64,000 nucleotides of DNA from Selaginella moellendorffii. Its lineage: Eukaryota; Plantae; Lycopodiophyta. The stretch is from contig NW_003314346.1 in assembly GCF_000143415.4 (NCBI RefSeq), positions 186,001 through 250,000 on the forward strand, in the 5' to 3' direction. The notes beneath the pieces are model-generated. The model was not told the origin of the DNA and searched no databases. It saw only the letters and a list, made by a program, of their open reading frames with translations. Below, one piece after another: positions 1,072 to 64,000 of the stretch (its first letter is position 1; every line of letters starts with the position of its first letter). The position numbers and the translations under genes are program-made.

Positions 1072-1074
1072 ATT

Positions 1075-20221: not shown

Positions 20222-20253
20222 TTTAGGGTTAGGGTTTAGGGTTTAGGGTTTAG
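20222..20253 (+). repeat. Internal telomere-type repeat (TTTAGGG)n, Sola copy 1
   Basis: TTTAGGG TTAGGG TTTAGGG TTTAGGG TTTAG. Confidence 0.92.
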
Positions 20254-24366: not shown

Positions 24367-25010
24367 GATGGCATGTATTTATTTAAAAATGTAACTTATT
24401 ATGGCATGGGGTTCCATGCCATTGTATTAATATTAAAAGACAATTCTTTGAGAGGATTTGCATTATACTAGAAGTGTTACAGCATGTTATTGGAAGTCTA
24501 CGAAGTTGTTTTATTAATAATGGGAAAGTAAAGATTGAATGGGGACTTGGGCTCCACCTAGACTCGGAGCAACTGAGCCAATATTAAAAGGATGGAAAGA
24601 AATTGGACGACGATGACAAGGAGAAGAGAGAGGTGAAGCAGTGGCAGGGGGAGGAGAAGTGATTGAGTAGACATTTCCTTGTTTAAAAAAAAATGGCATG
24701 TGCCTCAATGCAGTTGAATTTTGTTATATTTATATACTATATAAAGGTTTGGAAACCTTATTTTACAAGTGGGATAATGACAATTCCCACTTTAACGAAA
24801 TAGAGCTTAGTTGAAATCAAGTAGGACCAAGTAGGAACTGGTACAATAGGCGAGAACCTTGGCGAGAGAATTTAGCTAAAAAGCCAAGGCAATGTTGGTC
24901 GGATAGATGAGGTAAGCTGGCAAATTGGAAAGGAAAAATTTGTGGCTTACAATTTGGTATCGAAGCCTTTTCCTCAGTTCTAGCGAAGGATAGAGGTAGA
25001 TTTCTGGGAG

Positions 25011-27001
25011 ATGGCAAAGGTAGGGCAAAAACAAACCAAAGCGGAGATGGAACTTCCTCTAGAGCTGGAGCCTCTGATCGAACAAGAGGCTATGAATGAG
25101 GAATCTTTGCATGAAGAGGACTCCAGTGAGGAAACCTCCAAACAAGAGTCCGGTGGTGAGGTTCAGTCGTGCAAGGCTTGATTGAACGTTCTAGAAGGAC
25201 AATTGGCACAGACCAATGCCCTGCTAGAGACTCTCATACGCAAGCTAAGGCATGACGAGAAGCGGAAGAAAAGGCAAAAGACTATGGATGCTAGTAATGT
25301 AGAAGGTGCAGACCCTTCAGTAGGGACTAAGGTAGAACCAAACAAGGTCAAACAAACCGAAGTGGAATTAGTCCCTCAGGCAGTTCCCAAGTACAAACCA
25401 AAGCCCCCACCGGTCTTCAAGGGAGTGAATGATTATAAGGTGGTGGAGGATTGATTTTACAATATGGAGGATTACTTTCGAGCATTGCGGTTACCGAGCT
25501 TGGAGAAGGTCCCATATGCAAAACCATACTTGGCAGATAATGCCAAGTCTTAGTGGAGAATGACAGAGGCCAACAAAGGACCGGTGACCATTTGGGAAAT
25601 GATGAAGGCGAGGATTCGCGCGACTTATGTTCCTCCGAATGCTACTCTGCATCTAAGGGATGAGCTGAGTAGGCTGAAGCAAACCAGAACCATTCAAGAG
25701 TATGTGAATGGGTTTATGGCAAAGAGGATACTGGTCACGGATATGGGTGATATGGATGTGTTCCATGCCTTCATATCAGGCTTGCAAACCTAGGCTCGTG
25801 GTGAGGTGATATGTTAGAACCCGACCAACTACAAGGAAGCATTGGATGCGGCTATCAAGGTGCATTTTAATGATAACCTGCGAAAGGGGAACACAACGAG
25901 GTCGGGGTCCATGTTTAGCAAAGGGGCCAAACCAAGGAGAACATATAGCAAAGGGAAACTCAAGAGGAGTTTCTCTAAGAATGAGTCCTCGGGGTTCCAG
26001 AAAGGAAAATTCAATGGCCAACGAGCAAGTACATAGGGGAGTCAAGCAAAAAGAGACAAACCCATGGATAAAAAGGTCAAGTCTTTTAGCAACGTGGGAA
26101 ACAACGTATGCTACAACTGCGGTGAAGCGGGATACTTCTTGAGGGAATGTCCCTACCCGAAGAAGGCCAGAGCCAATATGGCCATTAAGTTAAGAAATCC
26201 AAACTAAGGTATATGATCCAGTCCCTAGCTCAAAGTTACTCATTACACGAGCAACTTTGGTAGAGAGTCATTTGTGACATCTACTAGCCCTCTGAGGGAA
26301 GCTCGGAAGTAGCTTTGTTAAAATCCTTATTGACACAGGTGCTTCGGATAATTTTGTGGCTGTAGACATAGTCCAGCAAGCAGGATTAACGGTACAATGG
26401 CTGGGTGAACCAAGGACGATAGAGTTTGTTCAAGGTAGCCAAAGCACCGATGAGATACTTCGACAAGTGAGAGTCGAAGTAGGGACATGGAAAGTAGATA
26501 TGGATTTCACCATGTTGGACATGGCGGGATTTGATGTAATCTTTGGGATGGATTGGTTCAATCGGTTCATAGTAGCCTTGCATGGACAAAGGAGGAACCT
26601 TGTGGTATTAGCGAATGCCCGGGGAAAATGATCTAGGGTGGAGGCTCAGGATCTAAAGGTAGGGCAATGTAAGGCCAAAGACTCCTGCTTAAACCTGGTG
26701 TCCACAAGTGGACAACTCACTAAAGGAACCAAGGTAGCATTTTTGTGGTTACTCTCAGTGAAGAGTGACAAAAAGACAAGAACAGAAGAAGTACCTTTAG
26801 TGATCTAGCGGGAATTGGACCAATTCTAGGATACCATGCCAGAGGAGCTACCAGCGGGGTTGCCCCCCACACGACCGATAGAACACAAGATTGAGCTGGT
26901 CGAGGGTGCTAAGGTGGTGGTTCGTCCCCCCTATTGTTTGAATGAAAAAGAACTCGAGGAGCTCAAGCGCCAACTAGAAGAGTTGGTGGACAAATGGTAT
27001 G
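25011..27001 (+). pseudogene. Decayed gag-protease of family B
   Basis: Collinear with 56944-58933 but with multiple stops and frameshifts. Confidence 0.9.
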
Positions 27002-30000
27002 TGTCGCAAATGTGACTTCAGGTATCGAAAGTTACCTGTCGACCAGTCCTTTCGGATATTCTTTCTTTACTGCCACGATAGCAGGAGGTTGGTATTGCTG
27101 GATCCATTATTAGTCTCCGCCTGAGCTAGTTGAGAAACTGGTCATCACATGTGCACTTAGACCGGTAGGGCACTAAGGAAGCAAATCTTAAGTTGTCATT
27201 TGTGAAGCAGACTTGACACGGTGATGAGAAACTCATGATGTTGACTTGCACTTGCTAGTGTTGGGAACCCCTGCAATATTGAGCTTGGTCCCTCAATATT
27301 CGCTAGATGATAGCTTACCGTGTCTGCCAAACACCCTCGCTATCATGCCCTTTGTGTTAGTCTCATTTCAGTCCCAAATGCTATTTATGAAAAGTGTCCA
27401 GATTTGCTCATTTGCATATCTACGGAATGTAGAGATCGGCCTGAACACAATGGAGTTTGTCCCGTGTCCAAATTCACAATCTAGGGACATTCTATATTTA
27501 GTTTCCTCAAGGGGGAGGGGGGGGGCTGTGGGGGGTTCCAAATGTATAGTAGGGATAGTGGGTAAGTCGGGCATGGCTGACCAACCTGAGGCATAGTCTA
27601 GCTCCCGCTTGCGTGCCTGTCCTTGTTCTACATCCGGCTTGGGTCTAAGCCCAAGTTCCATTCCATGCTAGCTGGTGGAGTACCCATGTCCTCACGTTAG
27701 GCCACCGGTATGCTGAAATAACGCCAGACTCCGTTTGGCTCTGTTTTGCGTGCTAGTCTTGGCATTAGGATGCTGGTTGCTCCAGGACTGTTCCAAGTCG
27801 CTCCGGGCTCTTGTCCCTTCGCTCCTTGGGCTGTATGCTTGGGAGTTGCTCCATGGTTCGGTTCCATCACTCCTTGGCTCTATGCTTGGGAGTTTGGCAT
27901 TGTTCCTTCATTCAGTGGCCCAAGGTCCTCAACCTCATATTCCACACCACTGTCCTTTGGACATGTGGCATGTGACACATGGCATCTGTCACGTGGCACA
28001 AAGAGGGTTTAGGTTCTACTTCGTGGTGTTATCCTATGGTAAATCACTATAGGATAAAGGATAAAAACCATGTGCACTACATTTGGTATCAGAGGATGAG
28101 TCTTGGTGAGTACTATCCAATGAGATTGGGCAACTATCTCATTGCATACGCAGAGATGAAAACGATGATCCAAGTGGCTACACGTTTGGGTGCAAAGACT
28201 TTGCAATCGTTCCTTGGGTATGGATTTGGTTACCATTTGTACCGCATTGTGTGAGCTTGCTCTTGGGCTCATAAGAAGGATTGAGTTGTACCGTTAGCAC
28301 GAGTTTGAGCTTGGGCTTGTGAGTGAGGCACATTAGCAACTCGAGGTTACATTTTGAGTTGGCAAGATTAATGTTAGCCTATCGGTGGTTCCATGAGATG
28401 TTCCATGTACCGTGGGTGAAAGTAAGCTTTCCTTGGGTTTGCTATGAGTGGCAAATAGGCTAGTTCGTAACTATTTAGCACGGCACTAGTGGATCCTTCC
28501 TAGGCATGATTATGGGAGAATCAATCAAGACTGTGGGGATTGGTCTATTGATTCAAGTAATCATTACTGTGCTCTCTCATAAACTTTTCTTGGATTGAAC
28601 TGAAAGTAGTGCGAATGCAAGCTTGAGGTTTAGTCAAGATGAGGCTGGAAAGAGAGTCATCAGGAACGAAGGATCAAACACGTAAATCATTTTCTCTTCT
28701 TGGAGAGATGAATTGCAACGAGGTGTTAACTCATTGCTTATGTTCACATCATGCAAACAAGAGTCCCTATCTTGATGCATATTGGAGATGATGGTCTTAC
28801 AATGGTGAGTTGTAGGATGGATAGCGGTGAAGTGCTATACCATTTTGTCTAGGCTTGCTATTGGAAGACTTGGGTTGCAATGCTCAATTCTTTTCCAGGG
28901 AACTTTGTTATTGCTCCTTGAGAAGCTTGGTGTTGGATTAGTGTTGAGTTTTGTTGGAAAGAGAGTGGCATGAGTTTGTCCATGTTGTGAACAAAAGTTA
29001 ATGGTGTTAGGTGTTGTAAATCTCTATTGATGGGGTGTGGCATTTATGTTGAATTTTGTCGAATTAAGTTGGCACTTGATATTCACATAAACCTTTGCAA
29101 TAATGACATAGGTGTAAGCGACTAAATTTTCCATTCTACTTTAGTCACTTAACCACACCTTCGACCACTTGGAGGAGTCTCACTCACAACCTCCTTAGCC
29201 CAATTCAGGACTTGGGACTTGCTAGCCCCGAGAATGGCATCCTTGCCACTCAACACTTGCACATGGTCCAAGTGCTCCACGTGTCCGGTCCCAAGACCGA
29301 CACCCAAAGGTACCACTGACATCTCGGCCCGTTACGCTAAGGCCATGCCCACTCACTTTTGCTGCACTAGTGGTCCAATACCACTGGCATCACCATCCCG
29401 TCTCGCCAAGACTGGGCCATGTGTCCACGAGGGGTCATCCTAGATCCACTCCTTAGCATCCTTAGGATGCCCACAGACTTGGGGAATCGCCTTCCCCAAA
29501 GTCCCTTTTTCAGTTCCTACCAAGTCCCTTTCTGCCCCTGGCCGTGTTTGACAACACTGCCACTGGATCGAGGCCCACAGGCCCGACCACTAAGTCCCAC
29601 GGTCCTCTGGGACTTCCTCACCTCACGACTGTGTCCTTGGTCACTACCCCAGAGGACTGCTCCTCTTCCTTTCCACAGTCTAGGCCTTTGGGGCAACTTT
29701 TCGGAACACCGTGGCCTTACGCGAGCCACCTGGGTACTCTCCCCGCCTTTCGCCTTTAGGTGCTCTAGCCATGGGCTTAGAGCGAGGTTCCGTTGAGCCA
29801 CACCTGGTATCCAAGTAGGTAGTGCCACCCACACTTGGACTGGGAGCATCGGCCAGTCGATCTCCCGGGGGAACTAGAGCCGGCTCTTGAACACTTCACC
29901 AAGCTACCCCGCTTGTCGGTCCGTGTTCACTCTAGTCTTGGACTTCCCAGTGGGCAGCTCATCACCCAACACTGGGTCCGGCCTTCCTGGGCCAAACTGG

Positions 30001-34263: not shown

Positions 34264-34294
34264 TAAACCCTAAACCCTAAACCCTAACCCTAAA
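34264..34294 (-). repeat. Internal telomere-type repeat, Sola copy 2
   Basis: (CCCTAAA)n run. Confidence 0.9.
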
Positions 34295-40708: not shown

Positions 40709-43700
40709 ACTTGCTAGCCCCGAGAATGGCATCCATGCCACTTAACATTTGCACTTGGTCCAAGTGCTCCACGTGTCTGATCCCATGACCGACACTCAAA
40801 GGTACCACCGACATAGCAGCCCGTTACGCTAAGGCCATGCCCAATCACCTTTGCCACACTGGTAGTCCAATACCACTTGCATCACAGTCTTGGCTCTCCA
40901 AGACTAGGCAAACCATCCGTGAGTGGTCATCTCAGATCCACTCCTTAGCACCCTTAGGAGGCCCACCGATAAGAGGAATAGCCTTCCCCAATATCCCTCT
41001 ATCAGTCCCCACTAAGTCCCTTTCTGCCCCTGGTCGTGTTTGCCAACACTGCCACTGGATCGAGGCCCACAGGCCCGACCACTAAGTCCCACAGTCCTCT
41101 GGGACTTCCTCACCACACGACTGTGTCCTTGGTCACTACCCCAGAGGACTGCTCCTCTTCCTTTCCACAGTCTGGGCCTTTGGGACAACATTTCGGAACA
41201 CCGTGGCCTTACGCGAGCCACATGGGTACTCTCCTCGCCTTCTGCCCTTGGGTGCTCTAGCCATGGGCTTAGAGCGAGGTTCCGTTGAGCCACGCCTGGT
41301 ATCCAAGTAGGTAGTGCCACCCACACTTGGACTGGGAGCATCGGCCAGTCGATCTCCCGGGGGAACTAGAGCCGGCTCTTGAACACTTCACCAAGCTACC
41401 CCGCTTGTCGGTCCGTGTTCACTCTAGTCTTGGACTTCCCAGTGGGCAGCTCATCACCCAACACTGGGTCCGGCCTTCCTGGGCCAAACTGGCCTTTCCT
41501 GGCCAAACTGGCTCCACTGCAGTCCTCCCCCTTACTATACTTTTGGAGCTCACCAAACCCCCTAGGGTCTGGGAGACGAACGCTTTGGGCTTTCACCCTC
41601 TCAGGCTCCGGACTCGGACTCGGACTCGGACTCGGACTCGGGCTCGGGCTCGGTCTCGGTCTCGGCCTCGGCCTCGATCTCGGTCCCGGTCCCGATCTCG
41701 GTCTCGGTCTCGGTCTCGGTCCGGGTCTCGGTCCCGGTCTCGGTCTCGACTTCGGACTCCATCTCGGACTCCATCTCGGACTCCATCTCGGGTCCATCTC
41801 GGACTCCACTTCGGACTCCAACTCGGGTCCATCTCGGGTCCACCTCGGACTCCATCTCGGACTCCATCTCGGACTCCATCTCGGACTCCACTTCGGACTC
41901 CAACTCGGGTCCATCTCGGGTCCACCTCGGACTCCACTTCGGACTCCAACTCGGGTCCATCTCGGACTCCACTTCGGACTCCAACTCGAGTCCATCTCAG
42001 ACTCCACTTCGGACTCCAACTCGAGTCCATCTTGGACACTCCCACGTGTCATGTGTTGGTCCTTTTGGGTCCCTTTTTGGAGCCTCGCCTTTTGCTCGCT
42101 TCGTGCTCGTTCCTCGAGCACTTCGTTGGGAGTTCCACTCCCGCTCTTGACTTTTCAAGTCAGAGCTTTTGGTCCAAACGTGTTACGCTCGTTTGGCTCT
42201 CGCTTCGGCCACTACCATGTGGCGCCCTTCCGGCTCCACTTTGGGGCCTAGGGATTTTGTGTCTCACAATAGGCATTGCCCATAGTGTTGCTTGATTGAT
42301 GATCAAGTCATTGTGATTTATATCATATCCATGTGATAATGAGCAATATGTTTACGAAGTTGCTTGGGTAAATGATGATCAACCCCAAAGTGGTTGATGG
42401 AGAAGCTAGTCTACTTGCACGAAGTAGCATTGTAGTAGCTTTGACTAAATTCTTAATGATGGTCCATTATGCTAAGCTTAAGTTGGCACCTTGTTTCCTT
42501 GAGTTTGCCCATTAGATGTTGGAAAAGAGTTAAAGCATTCACTTGCTATGGCTTGTTGGTTGATCTGTTAGCACTTGGAGTAGATTGTTGGATGGAGAAG
42601 ATGTGTAGTTAGGGCATTGACATCACTAGCACTTGTGTTAGTGGAAGTGGCATTGTTACTTCGAGTGATGAGGAATTTTCCTTGGACCTTGATTTTCTAT
42701 GTCATTTTTTTTGTTAGTGTTTTGACTTCACATTAGATCTTGAAGGTGATTGAAGAAGGGTGTTAGTGTAATGTGGATATCCAAAGATGTGGTCTTCGTG
42801 ATCAAGCCTTAGATGTTCATTTTGCACTTTGTGGATGTTGGTGTTGGATATCGGTTAGATGGACAAAGATGTTTGATGCTTAAGCATACTATTGGGTCAT
42901 GAGAATTTGTGTTAAAGTGAATCTATGTGAAGTTGTTAGTAAGAGGAAGTTTGTTGAATTTTGAAAGTTTGTATTCCTAGACTGAGAGTTATTCTTTCTC
43001 TGGGATGGAAAATTTTCCACAAATTTTCTTAGACTTTTCCAATAGCTGATCTGTTGATCACTTTGTTCGAAAACCATTCCATTTTCATAAGCCAGTACAA
43101 ACTAGTGAAGGGGTTGGAGTTGACTTTGGTTAGCTTAGACTTTAATAGATAGTTTGTATGATGAAACCTGAAAGGGATGCTAACTTTTGGGGCTAAGGCA
43201 ATTGAGTTGGATAGAGTCTGGAGTTGGTGTACCTTACATTTCGTTAGACTCTATGAGAGTAGTGAGCTCTCACTGATCTTGACTTGGTCTTGGTAGCCTT
43301 GTGCCTTGGCTGAGGATGGTGATATCCAACTTAGTTGTTTGAGGTTGAGATGTTGGTACCCATACTATAGCTTTGTCTATGAGGAGGTTGTGTACCAATA
43401 TGAGTCCATCTCATGGTCTACACTTTAGTTTCAACTAAGTGTTGATTATGTATAGCTAGCCTCTTCAAGGCATGCTCAGAGCTATTGATTAGACGTGTTG
43501 GTGAGCTTATTGCGGTTGAGTTGGATTCGAGTGGTCATTTGGTTCGTGCTTGTCCATGAACCTTTATCTCGTACTAGGATATTAAGTTCATGTTAAACAA
43601 ATATATAACTTGATGGTATGAGTTTAGTGTTTGGGTCTTGTGAAGGCACGTTGAAGAGTGATTGTTGGTTGTTTTGCGACTAGTGATTGTTTGTAGGCTT

Positions 43701-46725: not shown

Positions 46726-49314
46726 TTAAGGTTACTAACCAGATCAAGGTAGCAGAGGAAGATGTCGAGAAGACAACCTGTCGAACATGGTATGGGAGTT
46801 TTGAGTTTTTGGTGATGCCCTTTGGGCTATGCAATGCACCGGCAATGTTTTCAGCGCTGATGAACCACATCTTTGTACCCTATCTAGATCACTTCATGGT
46901 CGTGTATATTGACGACATCCTGATCTATAGCGAGACGCTAGAAGAACATGCCAAACACTTAACGAAGGTGTTTGAGAAACTAAGGGAACACAAACTGTAT
47001 GCTAAAGAGAACAAATGCGACTTTGCTCAACAAAAGGTAAAGTTTCTCAGGCATGTGGTGGGCTAAGATGGGCTCAAGGTGGACCCTAAAATGGTCCAAA
47101 CGATCCAGGAATGGGAGTGACCATCGAATGTACATGAGTTGAGGGCGTTTTTGGGGTTATGCAACTGCTACCGAAAATTTATCAAACACTATTCAAGAGT
47201 AACCCTGCCTTTAACAGACCAAACGGGTAAAGGGAAGATGGTATAGACAGCGGAATGCAAGGCGGCATTTATCCACCTCAAAGAGAAGTTGAGGAAGACA
47301 CCCGTGTTAGTGTTACTTGACTTTGGTAAAGACGTTGAGGTAAAAATAGATGCTTTGGACTTTGCATTGGTTGTAGTTTTGAAGTAAGACAACCATCCAG
47401 TGGCATTGTTCTCGAAGAAGTTGGACAAGGCTCAGCAAAAGTGGCCTGCCCATGAGAAGGAATTATTTGTGGTGGTCAAGGTGCTCAAGGAGTGGCGACA
47501 CTACCTTCGGAGGCATTTCAAAGTTTACACGGATAATGTGGCAATGAAACACTTCTTGTCACAACCCGACATAAGAGGGAAATAAGGTCGGTGGGCCAAT
47601 GCTTTGGCTAAGTTTGATTGCGAAATTCTGTATAAACCTGGGAAGAGCAACATCGTGGCAGATGCTCTAAGTCGAAATGCAAGCTTGAAGTTGGTGATAT
47701 CTAGCATGACAACAACCTTTTGGGACGATGTGCGAACAGCATATGAGAACGATGGTCTAGCACAAGAAGTGTTACTGAGGAACCAAGAGGTGCGAGAAGC
47801 TCACCAAGGAGGCGAGTTGCTAATAGAAGAGAAAAAAGATTATATAGAATGTAATGGACTCATCTATTATAAAAAAACAAGGGTGTATGTTCCTGAAGGG
47901 GAACTAAAGAAGGTAGCCTTAGAAGAGTGTCATGACGGACCTCTTGCAAGACACAGCAGAGTGCCCAAGATGATGGGCTTACTCAAGAGGAAGCATCACT
48001 AGCCAGATATGGCTAAGGACGTTCAAGATTATGTAAAGATATGTCTAACATGTCAACAAGTCAAAGCCGTGACTAAGGCTAGTGGGGGCTTGTTACAAAG
48101 CATCCCAATTCCAAATCGGCCGTGGAAATGTCTTATGATAGACTTCATCACAGAACTCCCTCCAAGTGAGGGGTTCGATGCGATATTCGTGGTGGTGGAA
48201 CAATTTTCGAAGATGGCACATTTCATACCCACCACAATGGAAGTGGATGCGGAAGGTGTGATAAAGCTGTTCTTCAAACAAGTGGTTCGAGTGTGGGGAA
48301 GGCCAGAAGAGATCATCTCAGATCGAGATAAGATCTTCACCAGTAGGTTCTAGAGGACTCTCCTAGAATAGTATTACACCAAGTTGAAATTCAACACAAC
48401 CTATCACTCACAAATAAGTATTGGGTATTAAGTTAAGTTTGATGGCACTAACACTTCTTGACAGACAGACGAACAGAAAGGGTGAATAGGCAGCTGGAGA
48501 ATTATTTGCCATGTTATTTCTCAGGAGATTAGACCGATTGGGTAAGTCATTTGGGACTTGCGGAAATGTGCTATAACAACTCACCACACTCGAGTATCAG
48601 GGTGAGTCCATGAGAAGTCATCAATGGGAGCTATTGAAAGTGCTGTGGAACTTGGCGTGGCTGAGTATTATGGAGAGTTACTTGCAGTGGAGGCATTCAC
48701 GGCAAAAAGACTCAACATTTGGAATTTAGTGAGGGATTCCTTGGAACAGGCTCAACAAAGGCAAACCAAATACATGAACCAAAAGCGCCAGGATGTAGAG
48801 TTCCAAGTTGGGGAGAAGGTGTGGCTGAACACCAAGAACCTTAGGCTACCAAGTGGGATCAGCAGAAAGTTGACCCAAAGGTAAAAATGCATATATTCCT
48901 GTAAATGAATTGATCTTGAGTTCCTTAAGCAGGTTCGCAAGGCCTTACAAGATTGAGGTACGAATCGGTAAAGTGGCTTACCATCTCCGACTTCCTCAAA
49001 AGATGGGGAAGATGCACCTAATGTTCCACGTGAACTTGCTCAAGTCGTACTTTAAGGATCCGCTTCTCAAGGACCAAGTAAGACCTTTACCTGAGGTTAT
49101 CCAAGGGGAAGAGGAATACAAAGTCGAGGCCATCCTCAATGCGCACAAAAACAAGCAACAAGGACACGAGGTGAGAGAGTTCCATGTGAAGTGGAAAGGA
49201 TTTCCACACTGTGAAGCAACATGGGAACCAAAGAAGAACCTAGTGAATGCACGAGATCTAATGGAGGAATTTTTGCAAGGTAGAACTCTATGTACTTATG
49301 CAAAGTTCAATTAA
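46726..49314 (+). pseudogene. Decayed RT-RNaseH-integrase-chromodomain of family B, retaining both introns
   Basis: YIDDILIYS and chromodomain fragments; introns at 48418-48464 and 48881-48932. Confidence 0.9.
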
Positions 49315-49890
49315 AGTATCTAATTATGAAGTTGAGCAATGGCATATGTTGGGACCCGAAGGCGCGCGGAAGGTAAGTTAATTAGCATGGGTTAGCTAGG
49401 TCGACCAGGCATAAGGAACTACACCCAACTCCCCGCGGGGATGTCGAATCCGTAGACGTATTTTACTGAGGTTAGGTTCGAGTCCCAACCCCCTAGTAAA
49501 GCAAGGCTGAGTTCAAGTCCCGACCCCATACTAGGGCATGGTGAGGTGAGGGGTATAGGGACACCTATATTTTGTTGTCATGAGCTCTTGGCCGGGGAGG
49601 CTAACTTAGGCACACCGATAAGTGGGGGGATGCCCCTGAAGACATAGGCAACAAGTTGTAGGATTAAAATGAGACGTTCAATGTGGGCATCGAACTTCTT
49701 CTATGGGTGGTGAAGTTGTAAGGAACCAACTCCCTGAGATGTCGTAGGCTAAAGGATCCCCAAAAGCACAACCGATATGATAAAGAGTTCATCGAATGGG
49801 ACCGAGTTTGAGATCAAGTCCAAGATTGACTTTGAGGACTTAGTTAAAAAGCCAAGGTAGTGTTGGTTGGATAGACAAGGTAAGCTGGCA

Positions 49891-54974: not shown

Positions 54975-56943
54975 TCTGAAAGTGCAGAAAAGAAGTTAAG
55001 ACCATACAAAAAATGATTGGAGAATGGCCTAAATCATAACATACCAAACAACCTCAATAGCATGAGGCCACATGCCATTATTCAAACATGCTATTGACAC
55101 CCATGTGAAATTTTGCATTCACAAAATTGGCATGAGCCCTCATGCTATCTTGATATACACACAGCTGCAGGCAAGTAAAAACATACATGACAATACGCTA
55201 GCCATGAAATTGCAAGGGCCCAAGATGGCATGTGGCCTCATGCCATTTCTAAATGTGGTCCTAAGCCATTCCATGGTGAACATACCAGGAAGCACAAGTG
55301 CCGAATATCAAGAGGAAGTGGTAGCCACACCAAAGACAGTGCCGCTCGCAACATTGCAACTACTCGTAGCGCCGCTCGCAACACCGCAACTGCTCGTAGC
55401 ACCGCTCGCACAAACTGCCACTCGCATAAACTGCCGCTCGCAATGGCACTCGCAATGCCGCAACCGCTTGTAGACGCATAAACCACAGCTCACAATGCCG
55501 CTTACACAAGCAGCGCTCACTGCGCTCAGCAGAACCAAGAACACGGCACACAAAAATGATAGACCTAGGAATGAGTTCGAGAATTCAAAAATAACACACG
55601 CTTGAACGTCACATCAAATCCTCTGACAAACCAGATTTTATGATTCCTCTGATAAATTTCAAACTGAGTAGCTTCTAGACTTTGCTATCGGAGGTTGAAC
55701 TTTGTCACATCATGTCCTTGCCTCGATCCAGCTATGTGTAAGGAACCGACTCCCCGAGATGTCGTAGGCTAAAGGATCCCCAAAAGCTTGACCGAAGTGA
55801 CAAAGAGTTCATCGGATGGGACCAAGTCGAGGATCGAGTCCAAGACCGACTCTAGGACCGAGTTCGAGATAGAGTCCGGAATCGAATCCGAGACCGACTC
55901 GGGGACCGAGTTCGAGTCCGAGTTCGAGACCGAGTTCGAGACGGAGTCCGGATCCGAAATCGGGTCCGAGACTGAGTCCGAGGTCGAGTCCGAGGTCGGG
56001 TCCGAGATCGGGTCCGAGATCGAGTCCGTGATCGAGTCCGAACCCGAATCCGAAGTCGGATCCGAAATCGGGTCCGAGATCGAGCCAGAGACTAAGTCCA
56101 AATACTAATACGGGTCAAGGGGTGAAAGCCCAAAGCGTGCATCTCCCGGGGGGGGGGGGGCTGCAGGGGGTTCCAAAAGTATAGTAGGGATAGTGAGGTC
56201 TAGGAATCAGTCTTGAAGGAATTCTCCAGTTGGGCTTCCAAACCGACTTGAGGTTGGGACTGGGACCGAGGGGCCTTGGGTGGGAGTGAGCATGGGCTTG
56301 GCTGGTGCCGGAGGGGCCACCCAGAGAAGTGCTCAAGAGCAGCTCCCACTCCCGAAAGGGAAACCGGTTGCGGTGCTCCCGGCTCAGGTGGAGTGGTGCC
56401 CCACTTGAGTACCTTGTGGCTCATTGGTCCTCGCCCTTCCGGGGGCTTGGGCCTTTCCTTCGGGATGGAAGAGGGGGGGTAGAGGTACCCATACCGGGCC
56501 GTTAGGCCACGGTGTTTCGCCCCGACGTCCCGAAGCAAGTACTGCACCCAAGGCTTGGGATTTAGAGGGTCCCATGATCAAGCCTTGTGATACCTTGGGG
56601 TGTTAGGAATCTGGAGGCTTGGTGTGCTTGGCTGCTTGTGCCTGCGGGGAGTGTAGCCGAACCTTAAGTCCAGTCTAACCCGGGGAGGGGGATTGGGAGA
56701 GATTTGGGAATCCGTAGATGGATGGCTAACACTCCGTTGCTCGTGCAGTAAGTAGTTGAAACCAAGTAGGAGCTGGCACCATAGGCGAGAACCTTGGCGA
56801 GGGAACTTAGCACAAGCCAAGGCGGAGTTGGTCGGATAGGCGAGGTAAGCTGGCAAATTGGAAAGGAAAAATTTGTGGCTTACAATTTGGTATCGGAGCC
56901 TTCTCCTCAGTTCTAGCGAAGGATAGAGGCGGATTGCTGGGAG

Positions 56944-59900
56944 ATGGCAAGGGCAGGGCATAAGCGAACCCAGCGGACAGAACCTCCGCCAGAGCTGGAG
57001 CCTCCGGTCGAACAAGAGGCTATGGATGAGGAATCCTTGCATGAGGAGGACTCTAGTGAGGAAACTTCCAAACAGGAGTCCGGTGGCGAGGTTCGGTCGT
57101 CCAAGGCTCGATTGGACGTTCTAGAAGGTCAATTGGCGCAGACCAATGCCCTGCTGGAGACTCTCGTACGCAAGCTAAAGCGTGACGAGAAACGGAAGAA
57201 AAGGCGAAAGACTGCGGATGCTGGCAGCGCAGAAGGTGCGGACCCTTCGGCAGGGACTGAGGCAAAACCAGACAAGGTCGAACAGACCGAAGTGGAATCA
57301 GTCCCTCAGGCAGTTCCCAAGTACAAACCAAAGCCCCCACCGGTGTTCAAGGGAGTGAACGACTATAAGGTTGTGGAGGATTGGTTTTACGATATGGAGG
57401 ACTACTTCCGAGCGTTACGGTTACCGAGCTCGGAGAAGGTCCCATGTGCAAAACCATACTTGGCAGATAATGCCAAGTCTTGGTGGAGAACAACGGAGGC
57501 CAACGAAGGACCGGTGGCCACCTGGGACATGATGAAGGCGAGGATCCGCGCGACATACGTTCCTCCGAATGCCACTCTGCATCTGAGAGATGAGCTGAGT
57601 AGGCTGAAGCAGACTGGAACCATCCAGGAATATGTGAATGGGTTCATGGCAAAGAGGATACTTGTCACGGACATGGGGGATATGGATGCGTTCCATGCCT
57701 TTATATCAGGTTTGCAAACCTGGGCTCGCGGTGAGGTGATGCGCTGGAACCCGACCAACTACAAGGAAGCGTTGGATGCGGCCATCAAGGTGCATTTCAA
57801 CGATAACCTGCGAAAGGGGAACACGACGGGGTCGGGATCCACATTTCACAAAGGGGCCAAACCGAGGGGAACATATAGCAGGGGGAAATTCAAGAAGAGT
57901 TTCTCTAAGAATGAGTCCTCGGGATTTCGGAAAGGCAAATCCGGTGGCCAGCGAGCAAGTACGTGGGGGAGTCAAGCGAAAAGAGACAAACCCACGGATA
58001 AGAAGGTCAAGTCATATAGCAGCGTGGGAAACAACGTATGCTATAACTGCGGTGAAGCGGGACACTTTTCAAGGGAATGTCCCTACCCGAAGAAGGCCAG
58101 AGCCAATATGGCCATCAAGTCGGGCGAAGTCCAAAATGAGGTATGTGATCCAGTCCCTAACTCAAAGTTACTCATTACACGAGCAACTTTGGTAGAGAGT
58201 CGGTCGCGACATCTACTAGCCCTCCGAGGGAAGCTCGGAGGTAGCTTTGTTAAGATCCTTATTGACACGGGTGCTTCGGATAATTTTGTGGCTGCAGACA
58301 TAGTCCGGCAAGCCGGACTAACGGTGCAGCGGCTAGGCGAACCAAGGACTATAGAGTTTGTTCAAGGTAGCCAAAGCACCGATGAGGTACTTCGACAAGC
58401 GAAAGTCGAAGTAGGGACTTGGAAGGTAGACATGGATTTCACCGTGTTGGACATGGCGGGATTTGAGGTGATCTTCGGGATGGACTGGTTCAATCGGTTC
58501 GTGGTAGCCCTACATGGACAAGGTAGGAACCTTGTGGTACTGGCGAATGCCCAAGGAAGAAGATCTAGGGTGGAAGCCCAGGATCTAAAGGTAGGGCAAA
58601 GCAAGGCCAAAGAATCCTGCTTAAACCTGGTGTCCACGAGAGGACAACTCACTAAAGGAACTAAGGCAGCCTTTTTGTGCTTACTCTCGGTGAAGAGTGA
58701 CAAAAAGACAAGAACGGAAGAAGTGCCTTTAGTGATCCAGCGGGTGTTGGACCAATTCCAGGATACCATGCCGGAGGAGCTACCGGCGGGGCTGCCCCCA
58801 GCACGACCGATAGAACATAAGATTGAGCTGGTCGAGGGTGCTGAGGCAGTGGTTCGTCCCCCTTATCGTTTGAACGAAAAAGAACTCAAGGAGCTCAGGT
58901 GCCAACTAGAGGAGTTGGTGGACAAAGGGTATGTTAGGTTGAGCAAGTCGCCGTATGGGGCGCCGGTGTTATTTGTGAAAAAGAAAGATGGATCTATGCG
59001 CATGTGCATAGACTACCGCTTGCTCAACAAGTATACAAAGAAGAACAAGTACCCTTTGCCAAGGATTGAGGACCTGTTCGATAGGTTGGGAAAGGCAAAA
59101 TACTTCTCGAGGATTGACCTAAGGTCAGGATACTACCAGATCAGGGTAGCCGAGGAAGATGTCGAGAAGACAACCTGTCGAACGAGGTATGGGAGCTTTG
59201 AGTTTCTGGTGATGCCCTTCGGGCTATGTAATGCGCCGGCAACGTTTTCGGCGCTAATGAACCACGTCTTTGTACCCTATCTGGATCACTTCGTGGTCGT
59301 CTATATCGACGACATCCTGATCTATAGCGAGACGCTAGAAGAGCATGCCGAACACTTGGCGAAGGTGTTTGAGAAACTAAGGGAACACAAGCTGTATGCT
59401 AAAGAGAGCAAATGTGACTTTGCTCAACAAGAGGTAAAGTTTCTCGGGCATGTGGTGGGCCAGGACGGGCTCAAGGTGGACCCGGAGAAGGTCCAAGCGA
59501 TCCAGGAATGGGAGCGACCATCGAATGTACATGAGTTGAGGGCGTTCCTGGGGCTATGCAACTACTATCGAAAGTTTATCAGACACTATTCAAGAGTAGC
59601 CCTGCCCTTAACGGACCAAACAGGAAAAGGGAAGATGGTATGGACAGCAGAATGCGAGGCGGCATTCGTCCACCTCAAAGGGAAGTTGAGGAAGGCTCCC
59701 GTATTGGCATTGCCAGACTTTGGTAAGGACTTTGAGGTAGAAACGGATGCTTCGGACTTTGCGTTGGGCGCAGTTCTGAAGCAAGACAACCATCCGGTAG
59801 CGTTCTTCTCGAAGAAGCTGGACAAGGCTCAACGGAAGTGGCCTGCCCATGAGAAGGAATTGTTTGCGGTGGTCAAGGCACTCAAGGAGTGGCGACACTA

Positions 59901-61713
59901 CCTTGGGAGACACTTCAAGGTTTACACGGACAATGTGGCGACGAAACACTTCTTGTCACAGCCCGACCTAAGAGGGAAACAAGGTCGGTGGGCCAATGCC
60001 TTGGCCGAGTTTGATTGCGAAATTCTGTACAAGCCTGGGAAGAGCAACATCGTGGCGGATGCGCTAAGTCGAAAAGCGAGCTTGAAGTTGGCAATATCCA
60101 GCGCAACAGCAACCTTCTGGGACGATGTGCGGACAGCATATGAGAACGATGGTCTAGCACAAGAAGTGTTGCTGAGGAATCTAGAGGCGCGGGAAGCTCA
60201 CCAGAGAGGTGAGCTGCCAACGGAAGAGAAAACGGGCTATGCGGAACGCAACGGACTCATTTATTACAAGCAAACGAGGGTGTATGTTCCAGAAGGGGAA
60301 CTAAGGAAGGTGGCCTTAGAAGAGTGTCATGACGGACCTCTTGCGGGACACGGCGGAGTGCCCAAGACGATGGGCTTACTCAAGAGGAAGTACCATTGGC
60401 CAGATATGGCTAAGGACGTCCAAGACTATGTAAAGACATGTCCAACATGTCAGCAGGTCAAAGCCGTGACTAAGGCTAGTGGGGGCTTGTTGCAAAGCAT
60501 CCCAATTCCAGATCGCCCGTGGAAATGTCTTACGATGGACTTCATCACGGGACTACCCCCAAGCGAGGGGTTTGATGCGATATTCGTGGTGGTGGACCGA
60601 TTTTCAAAGATGGCACATTTCATACCCACCACAACGGACGTGGATGCGGAAGGTGTGGCGAAGCTGTTCTTTGAACAAGTGGTTCGAGTGCGGGGAAGGC
60701 CGGAAGAGATTATCTCAGATCGAGATAAGATCTTCACTAGTAGGTTCTGGAGGACACTCCTAGAACAGTATCGCACCAAATTGAAATTCAGCACAGCCTA
60801 TCACCCACAGACAGGTAATGGGTATTAAGTCAAGATTGATGGCACTAACACTTCTTGACAGACGGACAAACGGAAAGGGTGAATAGGCAGCTGGAGGATT
60901 ATTTGCGATGCTATGTCTCGGGAGACCAGACCGACTGGGTAAGTCATTTGGGACTTGCGGAAATGTGTTATAACAACTCACCACACTCAAGCATCGGGGT
61001 GAGTCCATGGGAAGTCATCAATGGGCGAGCTATTGAAGGTCCTGTGGAACTCGGCGTGGCCGAGTATCATGGAGAGTTACCCGCAGTGGAGGCATTCACG
61101 GCGGAAAGACTCAACATTTGGAATCTAGTGAGGGATTCCTTGGAACGGGCTCAACAAAGGCAAACTAAGTACGCGAACCAAAAGCGTCGGGATGTGGAGT
61201 TCCAAGCTGGGGAGAAGGTGTGGCTGAACACCAAGAACCTCAGACTACCAAGCTGGATCAGCCGAAAGTTGACCCAAAGGTAAAGACGCATGTATTCCTG
61301 TAAATGAATTGATCTTGAGTTCCTTAAGCAGGTTCGCGGGGCCTTATAAGATTGAGGCACGAATCGGTAAAGTGGCTTACCGACTCCAACTTCCTCGAGA
61401 GATGGGGAAGATGCACCCAGTGTTCCACGTGAACTTACTCAAGCCGTACTTTGAGGATCCGCTTCGCAAGGACCAAGTGAGACCTTTACCTGAGGTTATC
61501 CAAGGGGAAGAGGAATACGAAGTCGAGGCCATCCTCAATGCGCGCAAGAGCAAGCGACAAGGACGCGAGGTGAGAGAGTTCCATGTGAAGTGGAAAGGAT
61601 TTCCACACTGCGAAGCAACGTGGGAACCGGAGGAGAACCTAGCGAACGCTCGAGATCTAGTGGAGGAATTTCTGCAAGGCAGAACTTTATGTACTTATGC
61701 AAAATTCAATTAA
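56944..61713 (+). CDS. Gag-Pol polyprotein (Gag, CCHC, PR, RT, RNase H, IN, chromodomain); spliced join(56944..60814,60862..61279,61332..61713), 1556 aa
   Basis: [40 protein letters not shown] and MDF...SDRD...TER motifs, plus EEYEVEAIL...VKWKGF...TWEPEENL chromodomain. The three ORF pieces join in frame only after removing two GT-AG segments. Confidence 0.88.
60815..60861 (+). other. Spliceosomal-type intron 1 (47 nt) in the integrase core
   Basis: G|GTAATG...CACTAAC...TTCTTGACAG|AC; removal gives HPQT-D-GQTER. Confidence 0.85.
61280..61331 (+). other. Spliceosomal-type intron 2 (52 nt) before the GPY motif
   Basis: AAAG|GTAAAG...TTCCTTAAGCAG|G; removal gives KLTQ-R-FAGPY. Confidence 0.85.
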
Positions 61714-61808
61714 AAATATCAATTTGCAAAGTTGAGCAAATGGCATATGTTGGGACCCGAAGGCGCGCCAAAGGTAAGCTAATTAGCATGGGTTGGATAG
61801 GTCGACCA

Positions 61809-62053
61809 GGCGTAGGGCACTACGCCCGACTCCCTGCGGGGATGTCGAATCCGTAGACGTATTCTACGGAGGTTGGGTTCGAGTCCCAACCCCCTAGTAA
61901 AGCAAGGCTGGGTTCAAGTCCCGACCCTATACTAGGGCGTGGTGAGGTGAGGAATATAGGGACACCTATATTCCGTTGTCATGGGCTCTTGGCCGGGGAG
62001 GCTAACTTAGGCACACCGCTAAGTGGGGGGATGCCCCCGGAGACATGGACAAC
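61809..62053 (+). other. Putative structured RNA in the chromovirus 3' UTR (double T-loop, GACA hairpin)
   Basis: Successive hairpins with compensatory differences relative to family A 3559-3970; also present at ~49407-49660. Confidence 0.6.
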
Positions 62054-63801
62054 AAGTCGTAGGATAAAACGAGACGTTCGATGTGGGCATCGAACTTCTT
62101 CTATGGGTGGTGGAGTTGTAAGGAACCGACTCCCCGAGATGTCGTAGGCTAAAGGATCCCCAAAAGCTTGACCGAAGTGACAAAGAGTTCATCGGATGGG
62201 ACCAAGTCGAGGATCGAGTCCAAGACCGACTCTAGGACCGAGTTCGAGATAGAGTCCGGAATCGAATCCGAGACCGACTCGGGGACCGAGTTCGAGTCCG
62301 AGTTCGAGACCGAGTTCGAGACGGAGTCCGGATCCGAAATCGGGTCCGAGACCGAGTCCGAGGTCGAGTCCGAGGTCGGGTCCGAGATCGGGTCCGAGAT
62401 CGAGTCCGTGATCGAGTCCGAACCCGAATCCGAAGTCGGATCCGAAATCGGGTCCGAGATCGAGCCAGAGACTAAGTCCAAATACTAATACGGGTCAAGG
62501 GGTGAAAGCCCAAAGCGTGCGTCTCCCAGGGGGGGGGGGCTGCAGGGGGTTCCAAAAGTATAGTAGGGATAGTGAGGTCCAGGAACCAGTTTAGAAGGGA
62601 CTCTCCAGTTGGGCTTCCAAACCGACTTGAGGTTGGGACTGGGACCGAGGGGCCTTGGGTGGGAGTGAGCATGGACTTGGCTGGTGCCGGAGGGGCCATC
62701 CAAGGAAGTGCTCAAGAGCAGCTCCCACTCCCGAAAGGGAAACCGGTTGCGGTGCTCCCGGCTCAGGTGGAGTGGTGCCCCACTTGAGTACCTTGTGGCT
62801 CATTGGTCCTCGCCCTTCCGGGGGCTTGGGCCTTTCCTTCGGGATGGAAGAGGGGGGGTAGAGGTACCCATACCGGGCCGTTAGGCCACGGTGTTTCGCC
62901 CCGACGTCCCGAAGCAAGTGCTGCACCCAAGGCTTGGGATTTAGAGGGTCCCATGATCAAGCCTTGTGATACCTTGGGGTGTTAGGAATCTGGAGGCTTG
63001 GTGTGCTTGGCTGCTTGTGCCTGCGGGGAGTGTAGCCGAACCTTAAGTCCAGTCTAACCCGGGGAGGGGGATTGGGAGAGATTTGGGAATCCGTAGATGG
63101 ATGGCTAACACTCCGTTGCTCGTGCAGTAAGTAGTTGAAACCAAGTAGGAGCTGGCACCATAGGCGAGAACCTTGGCGAGGGAACTTAGCACAAGCCAAG
63201 GCGGAGTTGGTCGGATAGGCGAGGTAAGCTGGCAAATTGGAAAGGAAAAATTTGTGGCTTACACTATGCCATGTCAGTGATTCGAACTTTGCCATGCCGT
63301 GTCAGCGATCCGCGCCAAGATTATTCGCCGTGTAAAGGAATAATTATGCTGTGTGTGTACGTGCATTTATGGCAATATAAGGCCACACGCCATTCAAAGA
63401 ATAATGCTAGTCGAGCATTTTTTGGTGCATTTTTGGGTTCAAAATTGCATGAGCCCACATGCTATAAAGTTTACCTGTACCAAAAATAGAAACAGCTTTA
63501 TTTACTTGGGAATTTAAGTGGTTGAGGCATTTTTAAACTTACAAACACATGCCCTACTTACATTCCTTTGGTTGCTTAAAATTCAAAAATATTATAAACC
63601 TTTCTTTTTGCATTTTCAATGTTTTCAATTATGGTTTTTGATTTTCGTAGGACCAGCCTAGTAATCTATTTGCATCCCGTCATGTTTATAGCTAGCTTTC
63701 GTTTGTCCCCTTCACTAGCCTCAGATACATCTGCTCGGCATCTGCCTCTTACAGCATTTGCCCAGAAAGGGCATCTTTCTTCACGCAGCTTTTGCCACAT
63801 G

Positions 63802-63827
63802 TTTAGGGTTTAGGGTTTAGGGTTTAG
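63802..63827 (+). repeat. Internal telomere-type repeat, Sola copy 3
   Basis: (TTTAGGG)3 followed by TTTAG. Confidence 0.9.
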
Positions 63828-64000
63828 CAATTCAGTAACTTGATAAACATGCAAATACAGAACTTGATGCAAAATCCTTTGATATGTCACAATGCCCTTA
63901 GGACCATAAACACATTTGAATAGAGAGGGTCCTTTCATTTCATAACTTCTTACGTAGATCTTGGTGAAACCAGAGTTAGTGAAGTTAGTGAAGTGAAAAT

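What the first reader, a model, noticed from the sequence alone, without database searches (positions are those of the whole stretch)
60780..61400. An intact LTR retrotransposon whose integrase needs two spliceosomal introns removed
Seen: the 1294-aa Gag-Pol ORF stops at ...[10 protein letters not shown]. Excising 60815-60861 (GTAATG...CTAAC...TTGACAG, 47 nt) restores the conserved Ty3/Gypsy motif [12 protein letters not shown]. Excising 61280-61331 (GTAAAG...TAAGCAG, 52 nt) restores KLTQRFAGPY and attaches the chromodomain. Both inserts are AT-richer than the exons, contain in-frame stops and are not multiples of 3. Both sit at identical positions and lengths in the older decayed copy (48418-48464, 48881-48932), so they survived repeated reverse transcription. 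Established: retrotransposition normally purges introns. The cases I know of (Ogre PR-RT intron, copia/EVD subgenomic gag splicing, intron-retaining Penelope-like elements) do not split the IN catalytic core. Inference: the element separates an unspliced, packaged genome from a spliced IN-producing mRNA that is excluded from reverse transcription.
Basis: partly seen in the sequence, partly recalled or inferred. Interest (0 to 1): 0.95.

Follow-up and report, generated by a model that had tools for sequence, protein, structure and literature searches.

The report
Retrotransposon with four real introns
A recently inserted plant (spikemoss-type) jumping gene that copies itself through RNA nevertheless keeps four true host-style introns. 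Two of them split its integrase gene, so a complete integrase can come only from spliced RNA, while new copies must come from unspliced RNA.

Summary
The window holds a complete Ty3/gypsy chromovirus at 55737-63263. It has 1148-bp LTRs that are 98.7% identical and a 5-bp target duplication (CTATG). Two paralogous "empty" sites confirm the insertion.

By its numbers it fits the published SM1-Galahad of Selaginella moellendorffii. That element was described as one 3885-bp ORF plus two short ORFs, with no mention of introns.

The 47-nt (60815-60861) and 52-nt (61280-61331) inserts are GT..AG and AT-rich. They sit at the same places in an old copy that is 11% diverged.

Both inserts are removed exactly in one 2.5-kb contig of a probable transcriptome run. 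The 47-nt one is also removed in one true RNA-seq read.

- A 66-nt leader intron (56845-56910) contains the end of U5 and the whole primer-binding site.
- A 157-nt intron (58141-58297) lies in the protease. Its removal puts a stop two codons after the junction, giving a Gag-only message.

The catalytic glutamate, the SH3-like domain and the chromodomain all lie downstream of the 47-nt intron.

Not shown: the isoform that makes full Pol, the exclusion of spliced RNA from packaging, and the absence of intron-less copies.

The scan has reported these integrase introns before on other copies in this genome.

Class: new variant of a known kind (Ogre, EVD/copia).

The parts
55732..55736 (+). Target-site duplication, left copy (CTATG)
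   Evidence: Paralogous empty sites at about 19684 and 34829 carry the 5-mer once, as CTGTG.
55737..56884 (+). 5' LTR (1148 bp, TG..CA). It has a 12-nt-period repeat region at 55737-56108 and a poly-G run of 13 at 56148-56160.
   Evidence: Self-BLAST gives 98.7% identity to the 3' LTR, with 15 differences.
56845..56910 (+). Intron 1 (66 nt, GAG|GTAAGC...CCTCAG|T), in the 5' leader. It contains the last 40 nt of U5 and the whole primer-binding site.
   Evidence: Exact GT..AG skip in X1 contig record 1. Donor and acceptor are kept in the old copy.
56887..56899 (+). Primer-binding site, TGGTATCGGAGCC (tRNA-Met type), 2 nt after the LTR. It lies inside intron 1.
   Evidence: Read directly from the sequence. 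It matches the published description of a 13-bp tRNA-Met PBS. No tRNA gene in the window to test complementarity.
56944..60828 (+). ORF1 of the unspliced RNA, 1294 aa: Gag (with CCHC), protease, RT, RNase H, integrase zinc finger and integrase core up to ...HPQT. The stop lies inside intron 3.
   Evidence: Pfam families RVT_1, RT_RNaseH, Integrase_H2C2, rve, RVP_2, Retrotrans_gag and zf-CCHC.
58141..58297 (+). Intron 2 (157 nt, GAG|GTATGT...CTGCAG|A). It is coding when retained and includes the protease active site DTGA. After its removal the frame reads ACA TAG, which gives a Gag-only product of 399 aa plus Thr.
   Evidence: Exact skip in contigs of X1 and X3, two studies. It is conserved in the old copy.
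60815..60861 (+). Intron 3 (47 nt, CAG|GTAATG..CTAAC..GACAG|A). It splits the codon for Asp in [12 protein letters not shown], 5 residues before the DDE glutamate.
   Evidence: Exact skip in X1 record 3 and in 1 raw RNA read of X19. Colinearity with Ty3 and PFV integrases and with plant chromoviruses.
60862..61279 (+). Integrase exon 2. It holds the catalytic Glu (GQTERVN), the rest of the core and the start of the C-terminal SH3-like domain.
   Evidence: 138 open codons at 60864-61277. Aligns to Ty3 Gag-Pol 1269-1388.
61280..61331 (+). Intron 4 (52 nt, AAG|GTAAAG...AAGCAG|G). When retained, a TAA follows one codon after the exon.
   Evidence: Exact skip in X1 record 3.
61332..61713 (+). Integrase exon 3: the SH3_Tf2-1 / Integrase_p58_C part, then the chromodomain, then the stop.
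62117..63263 (+). 3' LTR, preceded by the purine-rich tract GGGTGGTGGAG.
63264..63268 (+). Target-site duplication, right copy (CTATG)
24826..27002 (+). Old decayed copy, 5' part: the end of the LTR to mid-RT, 89% identical. It keeps introns 1 and 2 at the same places.
46729..49839 (+). Old decayed copy, 3' part: RT to the start of the 3' LTR, 89% identical. It keeps introns 3 and 4 at 48418-48464 and 48881-48932.

Best explanation
The element is a young, structurally complete copy of a Ty3/gypsy chromovirus. By description it is SM1-Galahad of Selaginella. It has a gene-like architecture with four U2-type GT-AG mini-introns and is expressed by alternative splicing.

What each RNA form would do:
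- Unspliced RNA is the template for new copies. It encodes Gag-PR-RT-RH plus an integrase cut off 5 residues before its catalytic glutamate.
- Removal of intron 2 (in the protease) stops translation two codons later. This gives a Gag-only message, as in copia and EVD.
- Removal of introns 3 and 4 with intron 2 kept is needed for a polyprotein with a complete integrase, SH3-like domain and chromodomain. This works like the Ogre intron, which must be removed to translate pol.
- Removal of intron 1 deletes the end of U5 and the whole primer-binding site. Such RNA cannot prime minus-strand synthesis.

My proposal is that this, perhaps together with packaging signals in the same region, keeps spliced RNA out of reverse transcription and lets the introns persist.

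Shown here:
- the four introns and their exact removal in RNA-type data;
- their inheritance in two copies 11% apart;
- the coding consequences of each splice;
- integration with a target-site duplication.

Inferred:
- that the partly spliced Pol isoform exists;
- that leader splicing is coupled to the other splices;
- that the element supplies its own integrase.
For: Structure of the insertion:
- LTRs, TG..CA ends, PBS, purine tract, 5-bp TSD and empty-site paralogs.

Domains and motifs:
- Pfam families on the separate pieces.
- DTGA, YIDD, HHCC and both DDE aspartates in ORF1.
- The catalytic Glu in exon 2, by alignment to Ty3 7q5b and PFV integrase.

Splicing:
- Four exact GT..AG skips in X1 contigs.
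- Both integrase introns are out in one 2500-nt contig that is 99.6% identical to this copy.
- The 157-nt skip is also in X3, from another study.
- The 47-nt skip is in the only X19 RNA-seq read that crosses it.
- X3 also holds unspliced forms, so splicing is partial.

Inheritance:
- The same four introns sit in the old copy.
- The published family reconstruction has the same 3885-bp ORF1 and a 309-bp chromodomain ORF.

Polarity of the change:
- The sister family SM2-Galahad (single 4731-bp ORF) and chromoviruses that are 47% identical are uninterrupted.

Consequences of each splice:
- One search shows the stop after intron 2.
- One search shows the PBS inside intron 1.
- One search shows the stops in introns 3 and 4.

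Selection:
- Differences between this copy and the expressed relatives are mostly synonymous in ORF1 (13 to 5).
Against: - The RNA evidence for the integrase introns is thin. It is one assembled contig from a run whose RNA nature is a guess, plus one raw read.
- Short contigs cannot phase the introns. The isoform needed for full Pol (intron 2 in, introns 3 and 4 out) was not seen.
- In X1 the assembled form has all four introns out, and that form would encode Gag only.
- Nothing shows that RNAs spliced in the integrase also lack the PBS.
- Intron-less genomic copies could not be counted, because the protein collections hold no member of this family.
- The first exon part of the X1 leader contig differs from this LTR at 10 of 110 positions, so it comes from another copy.
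Confidence: 0.72

Rival explanations
1. The inserts are tolerated lesions. Intron-bearing SM1 copies would be non-autonomous for integration and use integrase supplied in trans. The source would be an intron-less master copy or the related SM2-Galahad, whose Gag-Pol is uninterrupted. Splicing would then be incidental.
For: SM2-Galahad is in the same genome, has hundreds of copies and one 1577-aa ORF that includes integrase and chromodomain. No census of intron-less SM1 copies was possible. The full-Pol isoform was not observed.
Against: Both inserts have canonical splice sites and are removed to the base. Exons 2 and 3 remain open over 138 and 126 codons in a copy whose LTRs differ by 1.3%. 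The published family reconstruction and an 11%-diverged copy carry the same inserts. Lesions would not be expected to stay exactly splice-competent and frame-restoring.
Confidence: 0.15
2. The 'spliced' contigs of X1 are not RNA. They would be DNA of processed, intron-less retrocopies of the element.
For: The tool labels X1 and X3 'RNA? (a guess: may be DNA)'.
Against: X1 holds no unspliced form of a family with hundreds of intron-bearing genomic copies. Its depth over the introns equals that of the spliced contigs alone. Its contig set is only 26 Mb. A copy lacking the PBS and the protease active site could not have spread by itself. A true RNA-seq read (X19) shows the 47-nt junction.
Confidence: 0.05
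3. The introns are kept mainly because splicing helps the element. They could mark the transcript as gene-like (protection from RNA silencing, better export or translation), or remove the PBS target of tRNA-fragment repression. Their role would not be to dose the integrase.
For: Four introns, including one in the untranslated leader, give a host-gene-like architecture. Their sizes (47-157 nt) are host-like. The host's intron length distribution is reported as fungal-like and unlike that of other land plants.
Against: No data here bear on silencing or export. The positions of introns 2, 3 and 4 have direct coding consequences, which suffice as an explanation.
Confidence: 0.08

Closest known systems
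SM1-Galahad, Selaginella moellendorffii chromovirus (Novikova et al. 2012, PMC3350952)
   Same: About 7.5 kb. LTRs over 1 kb with TG..CA ends and a poly-G run. A 13-bp tRNA-Met PBS. ORF1 of 3885 bp without a chromodomain. Two short downstream ORFs, the 309-bp one carrying the chromodomain. This copy is very probably a member.
   Different: The paper reports no intact copy, treats the three ORFs as separate and does not mention introns or splicing. Here the ORFs are exons joined by exact splicing, and two further introns exist. The published consensus sequence was not at hand for a direct alignment.
Ogre (Tat/Ogre lineage, pea and Medicago): an intron between the gag-pro and RT-RH-INT ORFs
   Same: An LTR retrotransposon that keeps an intron in its genomic copies. 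The intron must be removed from a subset of transcripts to translate the downstream part of pol.
   Different: Ogre has one intron, between protease and RT, in a non-chromovirus lineage of seed plants. Here there are four introns. Two lie inside the integrase, one in the catalytic core. One removes the PBS and one yields a Gag-only message.
Gag-only subgenomic RNA of EVD/Ty1-copia, Drosophila copia and BARE
   Same: A splice centred on the protease domain produces an RNA that encodes Gag alone. This provides an excess of the structural protein.
   Different: Those are Ty1/copia elements. In Arabidopsis no such conserved splice was found in Ty3/gypsy elements. For EVD the splice is coupled to premature termination, which was not tested here.
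Retroviral leader splicing that separates genomic from subgenomic RNA
   Same: A 5' splice donor in the leader means that spliced RNAs lack cis elements needed for replication. From my own knowledge, in delta- and spumaretroviruses the major donor lies in R. Spliced RNAs there lack U5 and the PBS, as here.
   Different: Retroviral splicing serves env and accessory genes, and pol is read from unspliced RNA. Here pol itself needs splicing.
Penelope-like elements that retain introns
   Same: Retroelements that keep spliceosomal introns in their genomic copies (abstract).
   Different: They belong to a different class, with no LTR-integrase cycle, and have a different replication mechanism.

Membership tests
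Ty3/gypsy chromovirus (LTR retrotransposon) | Two LTRs ending TG..CA, flanked by a short target-site duplication | tested here: met
   1148-bp LTRs, 98.7% identical. CTATG on both sides. Paralogous sites without the insertion carry the 5-mer once.
Ty3/gypsy chromovirus (LTR retrotransposon) | Domain order Gag-PR-RT-RNaseH-IN | tested here: met
   Pfam hits in that order on ORF1.
Ty3/gypsy chromovirus (LTR retrotransposon) | [quoted passage not shown] | tested here: met
   The Chromo family (E 1.3e-16) is on exon 3. It is joined to the integrase only after removal of introns 3 and 4, as in the X1 contig.
SM1-Galahad (Novikova 2012) | Published architecture: about 7.5 kb, LTRs of about 1146 bp with poly-G, ORF1 of 3885 bp, and a 309-bp ORF3 with a group I chromodomain | tested here: met
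   7527 bp. LTRs of 1148 and 1147 bp with G13 and G11. ORF1 of 3885 bp. ATG-to-stop ORF3 of 309 bp.
SM1-Galahad (Novikova 2012) | Nucleotide identity to the published consensus, and host species S. moellendorffii | not testable with these tools
   The consensus sequence is not at hand and run organisms are coded. The species name rests on the architecture match and on earlier notes of this scan.
U2-type spliceosomal introns | GT..AG boundaries with consensus-like donor and acceptor | tested here: met
   All four have AG|GTA donors and end in CAG.
U2-type spliceosomal introns | Exact removal from RNA | tested here: met
   Four exact skips in X1 contigs. Intron 2 is also skipped in X3. Intron 3 is skipped in one raw RNA-seq read. 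Support for intron 4 is a single contig.
U2-type spliceosomal introns | Branch point and dependence on the spliceosome | tested here: inconclusive
   CTAAC is present in introns 2 and 3. No clear match in introns 1 and 4. Lariats and spliceosome dependence cannot be tested here.
Ogre-type splice-dependent pol expression | Intron kept in genomic copies, removed from only part of the transcripts, and needed to read downstream pol | tested here: met
   Spliced (X1) and unspliced (X3 record 10) forms exist. Stops lie in the retained introns.
Ogre-type splice-dependent pol expression | Tat/Ogre lineage, with the intron between protease and RT | tested here: not met
   This is a chromovirus and the introns lie in the integrase. 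It works like Ogre but is not a member.
copia/EVD-type Gag-only splice | Splice centred on the protease that ends the reading frame after Gag | tested here: met
   Intron 58141-58297 removes DTGA, and ACA TAG follows the junction.
copia/EVD-type Gag-only splice | Ty1/copia superfamily, with coupling to premature polyadenylation | tested here: not met
   The domain order is Ty3/gypsy. Polyadenylation was not tested.
Introner-like elements | The intron sequence recurs as a mobile family in unrelated genes | tested here: not met
   Within the window, introns 3 and 4 match only the two Galahad copies. The rest of the genome was not searched.

The most novel reading that the evidence does not exclude
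An LTR retrotransposon family has evolved a gene-like, four-intron expression programme in which one primary transcript has three fates:
- genome (unspliced);
- Gag mRNA (protease intron out);
- full Gag-Pol mRNA (integrase introns out).

Reverse transcription would be restricted to unspliced RNA because the primer-binding site itself lies in the leader intron. If so, this is a built-in safeguard that lets introns accumulate and persist in a retroelement. It would also make integrase supply depend on host splicing.
Probability: 0.35. Interest if true: 0.8.

Novelty: new variant of a known kind. Interest (0 to 1): 0.66.

Why it matters
Retrotransposition normally erases introns, and loss of an inserted intron is the classic proof that an element moves through RNA. 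A 2025 review lists only Ogre and EVADE as intron-bearing plant LTR elements.

Here an abundant chromovirus carries four introns. One lies five residues from the integrase catalytic glutamate, and one contains the primer-binding site. This would matter in four ways:
- It explains why SM1-Galahad was described as having no intact copy.
- It shows that Gag-only splicing arose in Ty3/gypsy elements as well as in Ty1/copia.
- It gives a natural system to ask how a retroelement sorts unspliced genomes from spliced messages.
- ORF-based TE annotation would score such elements as broken.

Tried and rejected
**Searches that gave nothing**
- I looked for family members in the protein collections, to count intron-less copies and to name the organism. 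The integrase part of ORF1 found nothing closer than 53% identity.
- Exon 2 found nothing at all.
- Exact look-ups of ORF1 and ORF3 were not on record.
- These blanks say only that the collections lack this family.
- No tRNA gene lies in the window to test PBS complementarity.
- The 30-nt loose-end sequence of the X19/X20 LTR reads is not in the window.
- The Ogre splicing paper (PMC2596294) is not held. Ogre is therefore cited through.

**Readings rejected**
- Fungal origin. The short introns and the C>T decay looked like a fungus with RIP. The architecture match to SM1-Galahad, and decay that is largely at CpG, fit a plant with cytosine methylation.
- Introner-type origin of introns 3 and 4. 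There are no other copies in the window.
- Frameshifting or readthrough in place of splicing. The stops and frame changes are removed exactly by the observed junctions.

**Other points**
The X1 contig shows an exact GT..AG skip there.
- Read laying was given 5917 letters.
Full report
**1. What is there**

Self-comparison of the window shows two direct repeats of 1148 bp, at 55737-56884 and 62117-63263. They are 98.7% identical, with 15 differences.
- They start with TG and end with CA.
- They are flanked on both sides by CTATG.
- They are followed by TGGTATCGGAGCC, a tRNA-Met-type primer-binding site, two bases after the 5' LTR.
- They are preceded at the 3' LTR by a purine-rich tract.

The element sits inside another repeat. 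Two other copies of that repeat lie in the window, around 19684 and 34829. They lack the insertion and carry the target 5-mer once, as CTGTG. This is therefore a true integration event with a 5-bp target-site duplication.

ORF1 (56944-60828) has 1294 codons. Pfam finds Gag, a CCHC knuckle, aspartic protease, RT, RNase H, the integrase zinc finger and the integrase core, in that order.

**2.

All of its items are correct.
- ORF1 ends ...[10 protein letters not shown].
- The 47-nt segment 60815-60861 begins GTAATG, contains CTAAC and ends GACAG. The 52-nt segment 61280-61331 begins GTAAAG and ends AAGCAG.
- Both have lengths that are not multiples of three and hold in-frame stops. Both are AT-richer (GC 0.38 and 0.37) than the coding parts (0.50-0.52).
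- Behind them the frames are open for 138 and 126 codons. The last piece carries the SH3-like integrase C-terminal domain and a chromodomain.

On uninterrupted chromovirus polyproteins of seed plants (47% identical) the pieces abut. ORF1 ...HPQT reaches residue 1287 of P0054 and exon 2 starts at 1289. That leaves exactly the one residue encoded by the split codon. Exon 3 follows within 2-3 residues of the expected place.

The solved Ty3 Gag-Pol (7q5b) gives the same result, 1267 against 1269. In the alignment to PFV integrase, ORF1 ends five residues before the position of the third catalytic residue. That position rests on my own knowledge of the D,D-35-E motif. The glutamate of GQTERVN is that residue.

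The product of the unspliced RNA therefore lacks the catalytic glutamate, the rest of the core, the SH3-like domain and the chromodomain.

**3. Inheritance**

A second, old copy lies in two pieces, at 24826-27002 and 46729-49839. It is 89% identical, and about 19.7 kb of other sequence lies between the pieces.
- It carries the two inserts at 48418-48464 and 48881-48932, with identical lengths and with GT and AG kept.
- Its differences from the young copy are dominated by G>A and C>T: 383 of 540, with 159 in CpG context. This fits decay of methylated cytosines.

**4. RNA evidence**

One search for runs and one laying of reads were allowed. I laid 56200-62116 (5917 letters) with two raw RNA-seq runs (X19, X20) and the contig sets of two probable transcriptome runs from other studies (X1, X3).

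X1 shows four exact skips. All are GT..AG once the cut is placed within the stated ambiguity:

| Intron | Coordinates | Length |
|---|---|---|
| 1 | 56845-56910 | 66 nt |
| 2 | 58141-58297 | 157 nt |
| 3 | 60815-60861 | 47 nt |
| 4 | 61280-61331 | 52 nt |

- Both integrase introns are missing from a single 2500-nt contig (59062-61660). It differs from this copy at only 10 positions.
- X3 shows the 157-nt skip. It also has contigs that run through intron 2 and through intron 3 (record 10, 60676-61289). Spliced and unspliced forms therefore coexist.
- In the raw RNA-seq run X19 the element is barely expressed. The one read crossing 60815-60861 is spliced, with 41 letters on the shorter side.
- X1 is labelled RNA only by guess. 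However, it holds no unspliced form of a family with hundreds of intron-bearing genomic copies, and its depth over the introns equals that of the spliced contigs alone. I take it as RNA, and keep the alternative as a rival at 0.05.

**5.

Intron 1 lies in the untranslated leader. Its donor (GAG|GTAAGC) is 40 nt before the end of the 5' LTR, and its acceptor (CCTCAG|T) is 11 nt after the primer-binding site. The intron therefore contains the end of U5 and the whole PBS. RNA that has lost it cannot anneal the tRNA primer.

Intron 2 lies in the protease region and is coding when retained. It holds the DTGA active site. The upstream exon ends on a codon boundary after residue 399, just after the CCHC knuckle. 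After the junction the frame reads ACA TAG. That RNA encodes Gag alone.

Both introns, and the TAG, are conserved in the old copy.

The coding outcomes read directly from the sequence are:

| RNA form | Product |
|---|---|
| Unspliced | Gag-PR-RT-RH plus truncated integrase |
| Intron 2 removed | Gag only |
| Intron 3 removed alone | Integrase core complete, stop one codon into intron 4 |
| Introns 3 and 4 removed, intron 2 kept | Full integrase with chromodomain |

The last isoform is required for a complete Pol. Short contigs cannot show it, so it remains inferred. The fully spliced form assembled in X1 would make Gag only.

**6. Identity**

The numbers match the published description of SM1-Galahad of Selaginella moellendorffii (PMC3350952). 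That description gives:
- about 7.5 kb, with LTRs over 1 kb, TG..CA ends and a poly-G run of 11-25 (here 13 and 11);
- a 13-bp tRNA-Met PBS;
- one ORF of 3885 bp without a chromodomain;
- two short downstream ORFs, the 309-bp one holding a group I chromodomain (here exactly 309 bp from ATG to stop).

The authors found "no putative intact copy", built a consensus, and do not mention introns or splicing.

The same paper describes the sister family SM2-Galahad with one uninterrupted ORF of 4731 bp (1577 aa) that includes integrase and chromodomain. The integrase introns are therefore particular to the SM1 lineage. I could not align the published consensus, and the run organisms are coded. The species name thus rests on this match and on earlier notes of the scan.

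**7. Mechanism**

I commit to the following.
- The introns are genuine.
- The unspliced RNA is the replicating genome.
- Alternative splicing doses Gag (intron 2) and gates the complete integrase (introns 3 and 4).
- The introns survive because only unspliced RNA is reverse-transcribed.

The PBS-containing leader intron gives a concrete reason for that last point. It protects introns 3 and 4 only if leader splicing accompanies or precedes their removal, or if packaging signals lie in the same region. That coupling is not shown.

An RNA that kept the leader but lost introns 3 and 4 would give an intron-less and fully coding copy. Whether such copies exist is the key open question. I could not address it, because the protein collections lack this family.

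**8. Comparison with what is known**

- A 2025 review states that plant LTR retrotransposons generally lack introns, with Ogre and EVADE as the exceptions.
- The Ogre intron lies between gag-pro and RT-RH-INT and is removed from a subset of transcripts, which allows translation of the whole polyprotein. This is the same principle as introns 3 and 4 here, in another lineage and at another place.
- A protease-centred splice that yields a Gag-only RNA is described as conserved in Ty1/copia, and was not found in Arabidopsis Ty3/gypsy elements. Intron 2 is a Ty3/gypsy counterpart.
- My full-text searches found no paper on introns inside an LTR-retrotransposon integrase, or on a PBS inside an intron of such an element.
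- From memory, the major splice donor of delta- and spumaretroviruses lies in R, so their spliced RNAs also lack the PBS. I could not verify this.

**9. Verdict**

The introns are real, inherited and needed for integrase. The sorting of spliced from unspliced RNA is still an inference.
- This scan has already reported the integrase introns on other copies of the same family in this genome.
  - the coding reading of the protease splice;
  - the PBS lying inside the leader intron;
  - the empty-site paralogs;
  - the published uninterrupted sister family as the comparison.
- Class: a new variant of a known kind.

Noticed in passing
window 24826-27002 and 46729-49839: The old Galahad copy is in two colinear pieces about 19.7 kb apart. 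About 190 nt of the element is missing at the break, and both LTRs are cut down to about 125 bp. This looks like one old copy broken by later nested insertions.
   Followed up: partly
window 55001-55736 with 63264-63989; 19082-20412; 34101-35564 (minus strand): The young element is inserted in a repeat that has two more copies in the window, 96-97% identical. These serve as empty sites. What that repeat is was not examined.
   Followed up: partly
window 56200-56709: Most RNA-seq reads of X19 and X20 that lie on the stretch fall in the LTR. They share fixed differences from this copy and leave it at 56709, running on into a sequence that is not in the window. An LTR variant of another element (or a chimeric transcript) is more strongly expressed than this element.
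   Followed up: partly
window 1002-1132 and 6796-6926: Two other LTR ends share the last bases of U5 and the same PBS (TTACAATTTGGTATCGGAGC) with Galahad, but differ before and after. They have GTTAAG where Galahad has the leader donor GTAAGC. This may be a related or non-autonomous family using the same primer.
   Followed up: partly
window 55737-56108 and 62117-62488; also 41584-42070, 5553-5900, 20816-21350, 30037-30622: The 5' part of the LTR is built of 12-nt-period repeats. Similar TCGGAC/TCCATC-type arrays occur at several other places in the window.
   Followed up: no
window 60809-60814 with 60857-60861, and 61278-61281 with 61330-61333: Intron 3 is bounded by a 5-nt direct repeat (GACAG), and intron 4 by AGGT at both ends. 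This accounts for the cut ambiguity reported by read laying. It may bear on how the introns arose.
   Followed up: no
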